Shown one piece after another: positions 14,485-29,646 of a stretch of DNA of 64,000 nt. Position numbers and translations under genes: made by a program. Under the pieces are notes generated by a model, which saw only the letters and a program-made list of their open reading frames with translations, was not told the origin of the DNA and did not search any database. Each line of letters opens with the position of its first letter. Position 1 is the first letter of the stretch. Origin of the DNA: Zygnema circumcarinatum SAG 698-1b (taxonomy: Eukaryota > Plantae > Zygnematophyceae). The stretch is from the NCBI GenBank assembly GCA_037447605.1, contig CM074816.1, positions 945,873-1,009,872 of the forward strand, read 5' to 3'.

Positions 14485-14590
14485 ATGGCTTCCCCTCCCT
14501 CCCTCCTCGCGCTGCTGCTCGCGGCCCTCCACGTGGCCGCGCTCGCACGTGCGGACATGGTCCCGTCCGGCCCTCCGCCTTTGTCACAAG
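14485..14590 (+). CDS. Exon 1: signal peptide
   Basis: MASPPSLLALLLAALHVAALARA-DMVPSGPPPLSQ: hydrophobic core, A-x-A cleavage site, donor AG|GTAACG. Confidence 0.85.
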
Positions 14591-17500
14591 GTAACGAAGA
14601 GTTGCGTGTGATGTCTTGTACGCTCGCTCGTCGCTTTTATCGCAAAATCATGGACTTCCATCATCAGACTAACAAGGACAGTCGATCTTGTGCACGGTCG
14701 TATAAGTAAATGGTGTGTGAAGGACAATGTTTCAGCCGGCTCTTCATCTTTCTGTTACGAGCTTTTTTCGTGTTCCTTTGTTTTTGCACATATTTATCGG
14801 AATCTCTCTCTAGCCCTCAGACGTTTCTCGAGTCCCTTTTTAGAAATTCCGATCCAGAATATGCGTGAGTTAAGTATCGGTTCGAATATCCTCCATGGAG
14901 CCACTTTCAGACCTTGAGAGGCGCCTTGTTCAATGGTTAGAAAAGGAGAGCTTTTGGAGGACGATCTGGTCCACTGACTGAAAGAGGGAGCGCCTTTTCT
15001 AATTCCACCATTTCATGGAGCTGCGAGCACGTAGACGACGCGAGAGTTCCAAAGGAAAGCATAGCCGCGCTTCCGACTATGACAGCATCGGGCAACTCCT
15101 TGCAATCATTTCATGCACGGCATCAGGAGTTGCAAGAGCATCCTTTCCCCTCCTCCCTCTCGCCCTCCCACTCCCTGTCACTTCCTTCTCGACCGACCTC
15201 ACTCCCTGCTTTAGCAGCAGGAGAGGGAGCTGTTGTAGCATTGCATTGAACCACCTCTTTCCTTGTCAGTACTCTCCTCTCCTATTGATGCCAGTCCTCC
15301 CACCACCTGTTGCTTCTGCAGAGGGGTTAAAAGGCGGTGAAGATTGCAGAATATGAGGGAACAGCCGATAGCCTTTCCGTGCGAGATGATTATCGAATCG
15401 GTGAAAATACCGCTCCAAAATACGCTTAATGACAAATGCGCTCTACTCCCCTCTCGTCCGACCCCTCCTGTGCTTTGAGAGCGGGAGAGGAGGCTGCTGC
15501 AGCTGCCTAGGCGGCATTAAAATTCTCAGAGCCTGTCTTCTTAGGGATTTCCAATTGTTAGAATTCTTCATTCAGAATTCGACATGTTCAGAACTCTTCC
15601 AGTTTTTATGAGCATCAGGGTATTTCTGCGCAGCTGCCAGGGTGACAACTCTCTCTTCTCTCCAGTGTTCAGAGATTTCATCTCCGCTCAAGGACTGCTC
15701 TGCCAACACCTCCACCTTCTGCAGATTTTGAGGGTTTGCAGGATCATCAAGTTTTTTCGTGTTTAGTGTTTCAACAGCTGACTCAAGAAGTGCGTAAGGA
15801 AAGCATAGCTGCAATTCTGACTATGAAAAAACTCGGATGCTCTTTCTGGCATCATTTATCCATGCATCACATTTTCATATACGGTTTCAAGTGCCGTAAG
15901 AGCTCCCTTTTCCTCTCCTCCCACTCTCCCTCCCTCTCCCTCTCAATCTCCCTTGCCCTCTTCCGCTCCCTCTCACTCCCTCACACCACCGACCTCACTA
16001 TCTGCTTCAACAGCAAGAGAGGTCGCGGCTGCAGCTGCTGAATTAGTATCGCAGAAGCCATGCCTCTCAGAGCTTTAACATCCCTCTCAAATTTAGGTTT
16101 CCCAATTTTTTATAATTCTTCATTCTGGATTCTTCATGGGTAGGACTCTCCCAGATTTTAGGTTTATTAGGGTTTTCAGGGTCGATCTCTGCGCTGCTGC
16201 CAGGTGGCAGCTCTCCCTCCCCCCTAATTCAGAGCTCTCCCCTCCACTCGATGCTATGTTTGTATTCACCTTTCTGTGACGATTTTTTTTCGTGTTCCTT
16301 TGATGTTTTACATCTTTATCGTCCATATAAGTATTGCTTCTCATTTTTCATTTTGCCAAGTCCTTGCTCGTGTTTTGTGTTTCCAAACTAAGTATGCTGC
16401 TGTCTACCATCTGGTACTAGCATTCTTTTTTTCACATTTTACTCCTGTCATGTGCTGCGCTTTAGGTCTTAAGCGCTATTAGGTACCATGCGCATTTCAA
16501 TATTTTAATTCCTCTGTTCATCGTTTGTTTATCTACTTGCATCTTGTCTCTGTGCTTGCAGTGAATCTGAAGCTCTGGACCGATACCTCAATAGAGAATT
16601 TCCTCGTCGTGCCCTCGAACTCGTTGAACGCGTGGTCTGCCGAGGGAAACAATTCTAATGACGGAGCTCGAGTTCAGTTTTCTGACTGTACGTATTGCCG
16701 CACAGCTTAGTGGGATTATCACTTGAGATATCCTTAACCTGATTCTGCCAATGCAACTTTCACAATACTTTTCGAACCTCTCTTTAAGTGGCTACAACTT
16801 TTTCCGCCCCTTAGCATGCAACATGCACGCGATTCCTGTACATGTATTTCTCTGGCTCGCTTTCGACGCATGTATATATATATATATTGATTGTTTCTGA
16901 ACAAAGAAGCTCTGTTGCGATTGCAGATTCTAACGGATTTGATGGTAACGTCGGAGCCCTGTGGTTCCTCAACAAGGTCGGAAGCGCTTACTCCTTTCAG
17001 CAAACGCGGGGAACGTGTTTAAATGTTCCAGGCGGTAGCACAGATGCTGACACAGTCTTGGTTATATGGAGTGAGCTCCCGCCCTGGTTAAAACCAATAC
17101 GCAATACATAATTGAGCTCTCTTGGTCCTATACAGAGTTCACTAGCTAGCTGGATATTTTATTTGATTACTTGGACCTGAAACAGCTTTAAGATACGGAA
17201 AGGATAACACGTGAGCAATGGAAGAATCGTCCAGATGCGTTTTTTAACGATTCTTTGAATGTTGTTGACTAGTCTTAGACGCTGGCAATATTCTCAAATC
17301 TCTGTGTCTGATGTCGATATGGGGTGGCCGGATGGGCTGCAGCATGCAATGGGTCCAGCAATCAGCTGTGGACACCCATCTACAGCAGCTCTTTGGATTT
17401 CTCCGTTCAATGGCAGAACGTGAATTCCGGCCTGTGCCTCGACGCTACCGGGTCCCATAATGGCGATTATGTAATTCAGTGGTATTGCAAGCCTAGCGAT

Positions 17501-29500: not shown

Positions 29501-29646
29501 TGAAGGCAGGAGATAAATGCGCCAGTCTTAAAAAGTGCTTCAACAAGAAGGAGAGTTTGAAAAAGCTCAATAGCTTCCCATGCACTGCGTCAGCCTTGAA
29601 AAAAATGAAGGCAATTTGTGTTCCTAAGACGAGCGCATGCGCTTAA
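14485..29646 (+). CDS. Secreted multidomain lectin-LRR-papain-EGF-LysM protein (about 1452 aa, 25 exons)
   Basis: Exons: 14485-14590, 16562-16687, 16927-17070, 17343-17552, 19075-19821, 20963-21250, 21616-21745, 22202-22285, 22971-23042, 23250-23321, 23521-23592, 23969-24040, 24253-24324, 24580-24923, 25142-25330, 25634-25860, 26129-26266, 26488-26707, 27107-27289, 27583-27726, 28006-28121, 28286-28375, 28510-28617, 29002-29199, 29440-29646 (4359 nt including stop). All 24 introns are GT-AG, phases match at every junction and no internal stop was found. Confidence 0.85.
15054..16260 (+). repeat. Diverged direct duplication in intron 1, with a third partial copy at 18400-18620 in intron 4
   Basis: Anchors ggaaagcatagc (15054, 15798), accgacctcact (15192, 15988) and agggt..ctctgcgctgctgcca..ggcagctctccctcc (near 15620, 16180, 18435). 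Confidence 0.75.
16562..17552 (+). CDS. Exons 2-4: ricin-B-type beta-trefoil lectin domain
   Basis: Three subdomains ending in GALW, NQLW, NQLW: GTCLNVPGGSTDADTVLVIWTCNGSSNQLW and SGLCLDATGSHNGDYVIQWYC...NANQLW (QxW repeats). Confidence 0.9.
18126..18348. promoter_or_regulatory. Intronic cluster of G-box/ABRE-like ACGT motifs
   Basis: Seven ACGT cores (GCCACGTGG, TGACGT, GCCACGTC, GCCACGTGGC, GCCACGTT, GCCACGTG, CACACGTGGC) in about 220 bp of intron 4. Confidence 0.4.
19075..19821 (+). CDS. Exon 5: complete legume (L-type) lectin domain in one exon
   Basis: FNYVNF...RLQLT...SFNARFSF...GDGLTF...GQFLG...AVKFDTYFN..NEPNGRHVGI...AWVEY...FVGFTAATG...HQILSWSF. Confidence 0.93.
20345..20452 (+). 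repeat. Degenerate interstitial plant telomere-type repeat (TTTAGGG)n in intron 5
   Basis: About 14 degenerate units: tagggtttagagtttagggcttgagggtttaggg...tttagggtttaggggttaggggtttaggg. Confidence 0.8.
20963..21250 (+). CDS. Exon 6: extensin-like Ser-Pro(n) rod
   Basis: Repeated SPPPP/PPSPPPPRP built from a 27-nt unit; phase-1 AG and GT borders. Confidence 0.9.
21616..24700 (+). CDS. Exons 7-14(5'): LRRNT cap plus about 7 plant-specific LRRs
   Basis: VVALLEFKRAF..LSNW...CSWDGVGC cap; repeats LDLSNNKLSGVIPNTLGQLQNLKK, LTLSNNQLTGVIPASLSNLTSLTE, ISLSLNQLTGEMP, LNFGGNQLSGPIP, LRLSNNRFTGTIP; five exact 72-nt phase-2 exons. Confidence 0.95.
24700..24923 (+). CDS. Exon 14(3'): Cys-rich/EGF-like module
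   Basis: CNNFCNARQPQGACGGNGYCSYNGSQPTCTCDIGYNITSDTNTC. Confidence 0.8.
25142..26707 (+). CDS. Exons 15-18: papain-family (C1A) cysteine protease domain
   Basis: Spliced [32 protein letters not shown] (oxyanion Gln, catalytic Cys); LAEQQLLSC..C..GGWP; DHSVAVVGY (His); [20 protein letters not shown] (Asn); CGIN. Confidence 0.95.
27107..27726 (+). CDS. Exons 19-20: two EGF-like modules
   Basis: NPCGNGVCTVNGSTNQCRCSEGF...TC and NPCGVGTCLNVVATPGAYACACPLGY...TC, each a phase 1-1 exon. Confidence 0.88.
28006..29646 (+). CDS. Exons 21-25: about four Cys-containing LysM-like repeats
   Basis: FTVPAGANMSCYDI..; YAVNEGDTCEAIAAYFNV...NPDLSCSQLRPFQQVC; YDVQPEESCFSI...LNPGVYC; YTLKAGDKCASL...LNSFPC...ICVP. 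Repeats 1 and 4 are more divergent. Confidence 0.8.

What the first reader, a model, noticed from the sequence alone, without database searches (positions are those of the whole stretch)
14485..29646. Secreted tri-lectin LRR cysteine protease: candidate extracellular recognise-and-cleave defence system in one polypeptide
Seen: a frame-consistent 25-exon ORF (about 1452 aa) joining signal peptide, ricin-B lectin, legume lectin, extensin-like rod, LRRNT plus about 7 LRRs, EGF, papain domain with Q/C/H/N, 2 EGF and about 4 LysM, with no TM helix or kinase. Known: L-lectin, LRR and LysM are three major ectodomain classes of land-plant pattern receptors, normally on separate receptor kinases; LysM binds chitin/peptidoglycan; papain-like proteases act in apoplastic immunity. 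Recalled, unverified: a wound/pheromone-induced Cys protease with chitin-binding repeats in Volvox, and LRR-C1A-LysM predictions in conjugating algae. I know of no described protein with this full architecture. Inference: a wall-anchored sensor-effector that binds microbial glycans and cleaves a target, or a cell-wall/mating recognition protease.
Basis: partly seen in the sequence, partly recalled or inferred. Interest (0 to 1): 0.92.

Follow-up and report, generated by a model that had tools for sequence, protein, structure and literature searches.

The report
Lectin-headed secreted LRR-papain-LysM protease gene
This is a real, transcribed gene of a green alga related to land plants. It encodes a large secreted papain-type protease strung together with sugar-binding (legume lectin, four LysM) and receptor-type (LRR, EGF) modules.

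Summary
The 25 exons are there, in frame, from 14485 to 29646 (1447 aa).

RNA-like public contigs show GT..AG junctions joining the legume-lectin exon, the proline rod, LRRNT and the first three LRR exons. Complete transcript-derived ORFs of related algae run colinearly from LRRNT to the last LysM (E 1e-180). Lectin, rod, LRR, EGF, C1A, two EGF and four LysM are therefore one gene.

The only junction seen upstream of the lectin exon joins exon 1, which encodes the signal peptide, directly to it. That skips the three ricin-B exons. No ricin-to-lectin junction was seen, so "tri-lectin" is unproven. The ricin exons are best read as an optional in-frame cassette or unused recent exons.

The protease has Gln/Cys/His/Asn intact and no I29 propeptide. 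There is no transmembrane helix and no kinase.

The architecture is not unique. Unnamed predicted proteins of Closterium and Mesotaenium carry LRR, L-lectin, C1A, EGF and LysM in various orders, and papers catalogue C1A+LysM in algae. This scan also noted many paralogues in the same genome.

Function is untested. My best guess is a glycan-anchored extracellular protease for defence or wall remodelling.

The parts
14485..14590 (+). Exon 1: start codon, signal peptide (about 23 aa, ...AALARA|D) and a short linker. It ends in intron phase 1.
   Evidence: First in-frame ATG after a stop. Only hydrophobic N-terminal stretch in the protein. Its last 28 nt are found fused to exon 5 in an RNA contig of run X3.
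16562..17552 (+). Exons 2-4 (16562-16687, 16927-17070, 17343-17552): a ricin-B beta-trefoil module of 160 codons, with phase 1 at both ends. Optional or unproven cassette.
   Evidence: Pfam RicinB_lectin_2 E 3e-9 and Ricin_B_lectin E 1e-6 on exon 4, E 0.007 on exon 3. Canonical splice sites and no stop. Skipped in the exon1|exon5 contig. Contigs lying on exon 4 run off into unlike sequence at 17359 and 17545, so they come from a paralogue. There is no ATG of its own upstream of exon 2.
19075..19821 (+). Exon 5: complete L-type (legume) lectin domain.
   Evidence: Lectin_legB E 6e-39. PHA-E and peanut lectin at E about 1e-14, with the sugar-binding Asp and Asn kept but the first metal-binding Glu replaced by Lys. 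Spliced joint 19821|20963 in runs X2, X3 and X4.
20963..21250 (+). Exon 6: extensin-like proline rod, 96 aa, 68% Pro, SPPPP-type repeats, no Tyr cross-link motif.
   Evidence: Translation. Joints 19821|20963 and 21250|21616 in RNA-like contigs.
21616..24923 (+). Exons 7-14: LRRNT_2 cap, then seven plant-type 24-residue LRRs, mostly one per 72-nt phase-2 exon, then a Cys-rich cap and the first EGF-like module.
   Evidence: LRRNT_2 E 3e-10 and weak LRR_1 and EGF hits. Joints 21745|22202, 22285|22971 and 23042|23250. Colinear with P0156, P0155 and P0157. The homologue's LRR block matches GSO1, TDR and FLS2 ectodomains.
25142..26707 (+). Exons 15-18: a conserved linker of about 40 aa (FRYxxxGY motif) and the papain-family C1A catalytic domain. 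There is no I29 propeptide.
   Evidence: Peptidase_C1 E 2e-12 and 5e-18. Gln in VKDQGSC, Cys in SSCW, His in VDHSV and Asn in RNSWG align with the family. A homologous domain matches mature caricain and papain at E 1e-40 from mature residue 4 onward.
27107..27726 (+). Exons 19-20: two EGF-like modules with 6 Cys each, each flanked by phase-1 introns.
   Evidence: EGF E 2e-4 and weaker hits. Conserved Cys pattern in the family alignment.
28021..29646 (+). Exons 21-25: four disulfide-containing LysM repeats and the stop codon. No GPI-type hydrophobic tail.
   Evidence: Profile against solved LysM domains, E 9e-13. The four window repeats score 28-44 bits against shuffles at 5.7 or less. Colinear to the C-terminus of all family members.

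Best explanation
One expressed nuclear gene of a zygnematophyte-like green alga encodes a secreted, soluble mosaic protein. The modules run: signal peptide, L-type lectin, proline rod, LRRNT plus seven LRRs, EGF, propeptide-less C1A cysteine protease, two EGF, four LysM. That form is 1287 aa.

Three ricin-B exons lie in the 4.5-kb first intron. They are phase-1 symmetric, so they can be included (1447 aa) or skipped without breaking the frame. The one junction observed skips them.

The gene belongs to a family of C1A-EGF-EGF-LysM4 cores carrying interchangeable N-terminal heads. In the databases searched here the family appears only in Zygnematophyceae. The heads look as if they were assembled by shuffling of phase-1 exons.

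Inferred mechanism:
- The chitinase-type LysM tail, and possibly the lectin head, dock the protein on GlcNAc-containing or other glycans. These could be microbial walls (chitin of chytrid-type parasites, peptidoglycan) or the alga's own wall or mucilage.
- The rod spaces the modules.
- The LRR/EGF block binds a protein or peptide partner.
- The papain domain cleaves nearby protein.

Shown here: gene structure, partial splicing, domain identities, catalytic residues, family membership. Inferred: secretion, glycan binding, activity, biological role.
For: - Frame-consistent GT..AG model.
- Exon-level Pfam hits.
- Spliced joints E1|E5, E5|E6, E6|E7, E7|E8, E8|E9 and E9|E10 in contigs of runs from two studies. 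Exon depth exceeds intron depth in those runs.
- The runs hold 0.22-0.25 of sampled words of 16401-26400, close to the exon share.
- P0156, a complete Trinity ORF, aligns in one piece with model residues 551-1441 (38% identity, E 1e-180). P0157 of Mesotaenium aligns with 579-1440 (E 3e-137).
- P0151 has a signal peptide directly followed by the lectin, then a short Pro-rich stretch, C1A, two EGF and four LysM. That matches the ricin-less form.
- LysM identity; the C1A catalytic tetrad; no transmembrane helix.
- Family members in Closterium and Mesotaenium carry shuffled combinations of the same modules.
Against: - Exons 11-25 were not checked against reads of this organism; only one 6-kb lay was allowed.
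- The runs' RNA nature is inferred from spliced joints and exon-biased words, not from their records.
- About half of the laid contigs are only 95-99% alike, so close paralogues or alleles contribute. The E1|E5 contig could in principle come from a near-identical copy.
- A C1A domain without a prodomain may fold or be regulated differently from papain. An AlphaFold model of EGF-linker-C1A left the linker below pLDDT 50.
- The lectin lacks one metal ligand (Glu to Lys), so sugar binding is uncertain.
- No data bear on ligand, substrate, localisation or induction.
Confidence: 0.62

Rival explanations
1. Under some condition (mating, wounding, infection) exons 2-4 are included and yield a ricin-B, L-lectin and LysM tri-lectin protease of 1447 aa, alongside the shorter form.
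For: - The ricin exons are intact over 160 codons, have canonical splice sites and are phase-1 symmetric.
- They have no start codon of their own, so they can only be expressed through exon 1.
- A paralogue's transcript has the same exon 3|4 junction. After its exon 4 it continues with ...AACTTAGCCTCC, which resembles the start of this gene's lectin exon (CACTTGCTACTCC).
- The E1|E5 contig begins exactly 30 nt before the junction, counting the two ambiguous AG bases. That is what I would expect if exon 1 has a second continuation in that run; this reading assumes Logan assembles with k=31, which is my recollection and was not checked.
- The scan's unchecked notes list ricin-headed paralogues (s1-350937, s1-378315) and a gene with ricin B next to a legume lectin (s1-339068).
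Against: - No 17552|19075 joint appears in four runs, although other joints of the gene were recovered.
- Contigs on exon 4 branch into paralogue sequence at both ends.
- The closest complete homologue (P0151) puts the lectin directly after the signal peptide.
- No public family member found here carries a ricin domain.
- The second continuation of exon 1 may simply be unspliced pre-mRNA, which is present at about a tenth of exon depth.
Confidence: 0.35
2. The ricin exons are unused passengers: a recent duplication or gene-conversion copy from a ricin-headed paralogue, dropped into intron 1 and never spliced in. The gene is then only a bi-lectin protease.
For: - Exon 4 shares a stretch of at least 95% identity (17359-17545) with an expressed paralogue, while its flanks differ.
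- 120-nt dispersed repeats (87% alike) bracket the ricin block at 16141-16256 and 18401-18520.
- The only junction seen skips the block.
Against: All three exons keep open frames, matching phases and good splice sites. That is unlikely for long under no constraint: (61/64)^160 is about 5e-4 if codons were random.
Confidence: 0.3
3. The protein serves the alga's own wall or sexual biology (wall loosening, mucilage processing, conjugation) rather than defence. The LysM and lectin modules would bind self glycans.
For: - The only functional report I found for an algal C1A protease (VcPap-11 of Volvox) describes induction by the sex-inducing pheromone (PMC2474614); the title of the paper it cites adds wounding.
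- The family is found here only in conjugating algae.
- LRR-extensin proteins, one of the PDB matches of the homologue's LRR block (6qxp), are wall-associated in land plants by my own knowledge, not tested here.
Against: - The LysM repeats are closest to chitin-binding LysMs of plant and Volvox chitinases. From general knowledge, not tested here, zygnematophyte walls are not known to contain chitin.
- A large family with fast-changing lectin heads looks more like a gene family that interacts with other organisms.
- Both arguments are indirect.
Confidence: 0.3

Closest known systems
Unnamed LRR-C1A-EGF-LysM and L-lectin-C1A-EGF-LysM predicted proteins of Zygnematophyceae. Examples: Mesotaenium ME000166S01720 (P0157); Closterium CAI5465050.1 (P0073), CAI5947134.1 (P0095) and CLOM_g7740 (P0170); EukProt Trinity ORFs P0151 and P0156.
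   Same: - Colinear core of linker (FRYxxxGY), propeptide-less C1A, two EGF and four Cys-containing LysM, at 33-40% identity and E down to 1e-180.
- The same accessory modules, LRRNT_2 plus plant LRRs and Lectin_legB.
   Different: - Module order. Here it is lectin, long proline rod, LRR, EGF, C1A. In Closterium it is LRR, lectin, C1A. P0151 has lectin then C1A with no LRR.
- None of those found carries a ricin-B module or a 96-aa rod.
- All are placeholder-named and untested.
Chlorophyte C1A+LysM proteins: the Volvox carteri pheromone- and wound-induced cysteine protease VcPap-11 (Amon et al. 1998, as cited in PMC2474614), and the Chlamydomonas peptidase_C1+LysM architecture (PMC2728734, PMC6362431).
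   Same: A papain-family protease joined to LysM repeats in a secreted algal protein. The combination is reported as lost in vascular plants.
   Different: - I could not read the 1998 paper or compare sequences. No chlorophyte member came up in my searches, so homology of the whole architecture is untested.
- LRR, L-lectin, EGF pair and proline rod are not reported for those proteins in the texts I read.
Land-plant cell-surface pattern receptors (LRR-RLK/RLP, L-type LecRK, LysM-RLK/LYP)
   Same: The same three ectodomain classes. The LRRs are the plant-specific 24-residue type with an LRRNT_2 cap, and the homologue's LRR block matches GSO1, TDR and FLS2 ectodomains.
   Different: No transmembrane helix, GPI signal or kinase. 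The output module is a protease, so signalling, if there is any, cannot work as in receptor kinases.
Plant apoplastic papain-like cysteine proteases (papain, caricain, RCR3/PIP1 type)
   Same: C1A fold, the Gln/Cys/His/Asn residues, 7 Cys (catalytic plus three likely disulfides), and closest solved structures caricain, ficin and actinidin.
   Different: No I29 inhibitory propeptide and no granulin domain. The catalytic domain is embedded between EGF modules in a protein of about 1300 aa.
LysM domains of plant and algal chitinases (Pteris PrChi-A 4pxv, Equisetum 5bum, Volvox 5k2l)
   Same: The GDTC...NPG..C..L..GQ.VC pattern with an internal disulfide; profile E 9e-13 to 8e-7.
   Different: Attached to a protease rather than a glycosyl hydrolase. 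Binding specificity of these repeats is untested.

Membership tests
Papain family C1A peptidase | Peptidase_C1 fold with catalytic Cys and His, the oxyanion-hole Gln and the orienting Asn | tested here: met
   Pfam E 2e-12 and 5e-18 on two exons. Q in VKDQGSC, C in SSCW, H in VDHSV and N in RNSWG align with the family and papain.
Papain family C1A peptidase | Synthesis as a zymogen with an N-terminal I29-type inhibitory propeptide | tested here: not met
   No I29 hit on any exon or on homologues. Alignment to procaricain starts at its mature domain. Only a conserved linker of about 40 aa precedes the domain.
LysM domain | Sequence match to the LysM (beta-alpha-alpha-beta) module | tested here: met
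   Pfam on single exons gives only E 0.02. The family repeat profile hits solved LysMs at E 9e-13, and the four window repeats score 28-44 bits against an other-species profile, with shuffles at 5.7 or less. The fold itself was not modelled.
LysM domain | Binding of chitin or peptidoglycan-type GlcNAc polymers | not testable with these tools
   Needs pull-down or a glycan array.
Legume (L-type) lectin | Lectin_legB beta-sandwich domain | tested here: met
   Pfam E 6e-39. PHA-E and peanut lectin at E about 1e-14.
Legume (L-type) lectin | Intact Mn/Ca ligands and the sugar-binding Asp/Gly/Asn | tested here: inconclusive
   In the alignment to PHA-E the motif AVEFDT..N..WDP..RH corresponds to AVKFDT..N..YNEP..RH. 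The first Glu is Lys and the Asp is Glu, while the other ligands and the DGL Asp are kept.
Ricin-B lectin (as part of this protein) | Beta-trefoil module present in the mature mRNA | tested here: not met
   The domain is encoded (Pfam E 3e-9). The one junction seen joins exon 1 to exon 5, and no exon 4|5 joint appears in four runs. Absence in other conditions is not shown.
Plant LRR receptor kinase / receptor-like protein | LRRNT_2-capped plant-specific LRR ectodomain | tested here: met
   LRRNT_2 E 3e-10. Seven 24-residue repeats of the LxxLxLxxNxL(S/T)GxIP type.
Plant LRR receptor kinase / receptor-like protein | Transmembrane helix, with or without a kinase | tested here: not met
   No 19-residue window above KD 1.5 apart from the signal peptide and the catalytic helix. 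No kinase hit.
Extensin | Ser-Pro(3-5) repeats | tested here: met
   The 96-aa exon 6 is 68% Pro, with repeated SPPPP and RPPP units.
Extensin | Tyr-containing cross-linking motifs (YXY, VYK) | tested here: not met
   No Tyr in exon 6.
Zygnematophyte C1A-EGF2-LysM4 mosaic protease family | Colinear linker-C1A-EGF-EGF-LysM x4 core shared with Closterium, Mesotaenium and Trinity ORFs | tested here: met
   Single-piece alignments at E 1e-180 to 1e-77. The multiple alignment runs to the C-terminus. tblastn of the homologues hits only this locus in the window.

The most novel reading that the evidence does not exclude
The gene is a condition-switched sensor-effector. Alternative inclusion of the ricin-B cassette changes the glycan specificity of a secreted protease that recognises non-self with the same three ectodomain classes land plants later wired to kinases. 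On this reading, an extracellular "recognise and cut" immunity would have preceded receptor-kinase signalling in the lineage closest to land plants.
Probability: 0.08. Interest if true: 0.85.

Novelty: new variant of a known kind. Interest (0 to 1): 0.42.

Why it matters
Zygnematophyceae are the closest algal relatives of land plants. Here LRR, L-lectin and LysM modules are attached not to kinases but to an apparently active protease. They sit in a gene family that swaps its heads through phase-1 exons.

If the family proves to target microbes, it would show an alternative, effector-coupled use of these recognition modules, which land plants use in pattern receptors. If it acts on the alga's own wall, it bears on wall remodelling and conjugation.

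This particular locus adds three things:
- a new module order, with the lectin head before a long proline rod and the LRRs;
- a possible alternatively spliced lectin cassette;
- one more documented member.

It is not a new kind of system. The scan noted many paralogues in the same genome, and public databases hold relatives.

Tried and rejected
- Two or more merged genes: rejected for exons 5-10 by spliced joints and for exons 7-25 by colinear complete ORFs of relatives.
- A nested independent ricin gene: rejected. There is no ATG upstream of exon 2 in frame, and the hydrophobic stretch there is the translated polypyrimidine tract.
- Paralogues elsewhere in the window: none.
- The loose-end strings of the exon-4 contigs are not in the window, so they come from another locus.
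- The search for homologous proteins with ricin exon 4 found nothing. This is uninformative, because only proteins of similar length are seen.
- An AlphaFold model of a homologue's EGF-linker-C1A, made to see whether the conserved linker occupies the active-site cleft: core pLDDT 80-95, but linker and EGF below 50, so inconclusive. No fold search was run on it.
- Repeats around the ricin block: only a 120-nt dispersed repeat on each side. This is suggestive of insertion but proves nothing.
- Papers: no paper holds Zygnematophyceae, LysM and papain together. Amon et al. 1998 is not held.
- Left out by rule: the joined spliced protein was never sent to any search, family, structure or complex tool. 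All such calls used single exons by reference or database proteins. The joined model was built only inside scripts, for the frame check and for local alignment with proteins already fetched.
- The species was not identified; run and organism names were coded.

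
Full report
**What is in the sequence**

The window is eukaryotic, with about 46-52% G+C over the locus. It holds many short open segments separated by GT..AG introns. 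I chose splice sites from frame, consensus and domain continuity. This gives a 25-exon model from the ATG at 14485 to the stop at 29644-29646. It is 4344 nt, or 1447 aa, with one continuous frame.

**Domain identities, exon by exon**

Pfam scans of each exon-bearing open segment, given by reference, gave these results:
- RicinB_lectin_2 at E 3e-9 and Ricin_B_lectin at E 1e-6 on exon 4, and a weak hit on exon 3
- Lectin_legB at E 6e-39 on exon 5
- nothing on the proline exon, as expected
- LRRNT_2 at E 3e-10
- weak LRR_1 hits on single-repeat exons
- weak EGF hits, best E 2e-4
- Peptidase_C1 at E 2e-12 and 5e-18
- LysM at only E 0.02

The protease has the oxyanion Gln (VKDQGSC), the catalytic Cys (SSCW, split by an intron just before it), His (VDHSV) and Asn (RNSWG). 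It has seven Cys like papain. A homologous domain aligns with mature caricain, ficin, actinidin and papain at E 1e-40, starting at mature residue 4, and no propeptide is matched.

The legume-lectin exon matches PHA-E and peanut lectin at E about 1e-14. It keeps the DGL Asp, the Asn and the His, but has Lys for the first metal-binding Glu.

No 19-residue window is hydrophobic enough for a membrane helix except the signal peptide and the buried catalytic helix. There is no C-terminal hydrophobic tail.

**LysM**

The exon-level signal was weak, so I tested the tail in two other ways.

First, I aligned thirty repeat units: two from the window by reference, and 28 from relatives. The resulting profile hits solved LysM domains of fern, horsetail and Volvox chitinases (4pxv, 5bum, 5k2l) at E 9e-13 to 8e-7. 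It also hits bacterial and fungal LysM proteins more weakly.

Second, I built a profile from the 28 foreign repeats alone. It scores the four window repeats at 44, 35, 30 and 28 bits. Two hundred shuffled versions reach at most 5.7 bits.

The tail is four Cys-containing LysM repeats of the chitinase type.

**Is it one transcript?**

Public runs of the same (coded) organism hold 0.22-0.25 of the sampled words of 16401-26400. That is close to the exon share of the stretch, about 0.3.

Contigs show GT..AG joints exactly at my predicted sites:

| Joint | Modules joined | Runs |
|---|---|---|
| 19821\|20963 | lectin to proline rod | three |
| 21250\|21616 | rod to LRRNT | four |
| 21745\|22202 | LRRNT to LRR 1 | four |
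| 22285\|22971 | LRR 1 to LRR 2 | four |
| 23042\|23250 | LRR 2 to LRR 3 | one, plus matching loose ends in others |

Introns are covered at roughly a tenth of exon depth by exact unspliced contigs, as expected of RNA that contains some pre-mRNA.

No joint links ricin exon 4 (ending at 17552) to exon 5 (starting at 19075). Instead, the X3 contig that enters exon 5 carries 28 upstream letters. These are an exact and unique match to 14561-14588, the end of exon 1. Exon 1 is therefore spliced straight to exon 5. The frame is kept (…PLSQ-A-LATP…) because all these introns are phase 1.

Contigs that lie on exon 4 match only 17359-17545. At both ends they run into sequence that is not in the window. 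One end reads through an exon 3|4-type junction of a different copy. These contigs come from a paralogue.

Ricin inclusion at this locus is therefore unproven, and skipping is directly seen. One caveat: the E1|E5 contig begins exactly 30 nt before the junction. That is what I would expect if exon 1 has a second continuation in that run, but the second continuation may be unspliced RNA. This reading assumes Logan assembles with k=31, which I recall but did not check.

**Relatives**

An exhaustive HMMER search with the lectin exon found no near-identical protein. The best hit was 41% identical, so this genome's proteins are not in that library. It did find long proteins that also match the protease tail.

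Local alignment of the model with the fetched proteins shows:
- P0156, a complete Trinity ORF of 1041 aa, is colinear with model residues 551-1441 (E 1e-180).
- P0155 is colinear with 595-1441 and Mesotaenium P0157 with 579-1440.
- P0151 (909 aa) is signal peptide, L-lectin, short Pro stretch, C1A, two EGF and four LysM. Its lectin directly follows the signal peptide, as in the ricin-less form here.

Cluster look-ups and two further searches name the sources: Closterium species (many "unnamed protein product" entries), Mesotaenium endlicherianum, and EukProt transcriptomes. All named sources are Zygnematophyceae. No other lineage appeared within the limits of those searches.

Their Pfam architectures are LRR-C1-EGF-LysM, LRR-Lectin_legB-C1-EGF-LysM, Lectin_legB-C1-LysM and C1-LysM-EGF. 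The domain set, apart from ricin and the long rod, is already public. The order differs: Closterium has LRR before the lectin, whereas this gene has lectin, rod, LRR, EGF. The homologue's LRR block is of the plant receptor type, with best PDB matches GSO1, TDR and FLS2.

**Gene architecture and evolution**

Every border between modules is a phase-1 intron. This holds for signal peptide|ricin, ricin|lectin, lectin|rod, rod|LRRNT, EGF|C1A, C1A|EGF, EGF|EGF and EGF|LysM. The LRRs are one 72-nt phase-2 exon each, and the LysM repeats are cut by phase-0 introns.

It explains both the in-frame skipping of the ricin block and the family's varied heads.

Earlier notes of this scan describe many paralogues in the same genome, with ricin, hevein, CBM14, PAN, NIDO or LRR heads. 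I did not check those loci. They mean that the scan has found this family before on other DNA.

**Function**

Nothing here tests function. I commit to a secreted, glycan-anchored protease.
- The LysM tail, and perhaps the lectin head, dock on GlcNAc-type or other glycans.
- The rod spaces the modules.
- The LRR/EGF block binds a protein partner or substrate.
- The C1A domain cuts.

Defence against chitin-walled parasites or bacteria, and self-wall or mating functions, are both open. The only algal C1A protease with a reported physiological role is the Volvox protein VcPap-11. [quoted passage not shown] 1998, whose title adds wounding). I could not read the 1998 paper.

How a propeptide-less C1A domain is kept in check is unknown. 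A model of a homologue's EGF-linker-C1A left the conserved linker at low confidence.

**Literature**

C1A+LysM is catalogued as an algal architecture lost in vascular plants (PMC2728734, PMC6362431). I found no paper on the zygnematophyte LRR/lectin-bearing forms.

**Verdict**

This is a real gene with a largely correct domain reading. It is a new variant (module order, long rod, possible ricin cassette) of a catalogued but unstudied family. The tri-lectin claim is not supported by the one junction seen, and the function is inferred only.

Noticed in passing
window 20346-20462 (intron 5): A degenerate array of plant-type telomere repeats (TTTAGGG-like) lies inside the intron. RNA contigs from elsewhere end on it with long loose ends.
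   Followed up: partly
window 14307-14481 and 15916-15997; also 8160-8400: A (GAGAGG)n purine microsatellite sits directly upstream of the start codon. There is a complementary CT-rich copy in intron 1 and similar tracts near 8.2-8.4 kb.
   Followed up: no
window 16141-16256 and 18401-18520: A 120-nt dispersed repeat (87% alike, same orientation) brackets the three ricin exons. This may be a trace of how the block arrived.
   Followed up: partly
window 17727-18100 (intron 4): A G+C-rich insert has long open frames on both strands and no Pfam hit. RNA contigs with several mismatches cover it at high depth, so a repeated element is expressed from other copies.
   Followed up: partly
window 19273-19560 (inside the lectin exon): Contigs of runs X1 and X3 skip 286 nt inside exon 5, with non-canonical ends (TG..CG) and three other letters between. 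This would break the frame. It could be a paralogue, an assembly artefact or an aberrant splice.
   Followed up: no
window 32168-38623 (+), 44070-47188 (+), 53184-56094 (-): Copia-type retrotransposon fragments (RVT_2, integrase core, gag-pre-integrase) fill the downstream flank. The translations also show runs of N, i.e. assembly gaps, near 8.0, 32.2, 38.1 and 60.7 kb.
   Followed up: partly
window 25142-25260 (start of exon 15): A linker of about 40 aa with an FRYxxxGY motif precedes the C1A domain. It is conserved in most members aligned over that stretch, in place of a propeptide. Its role is unknown.
   Followed up: partly
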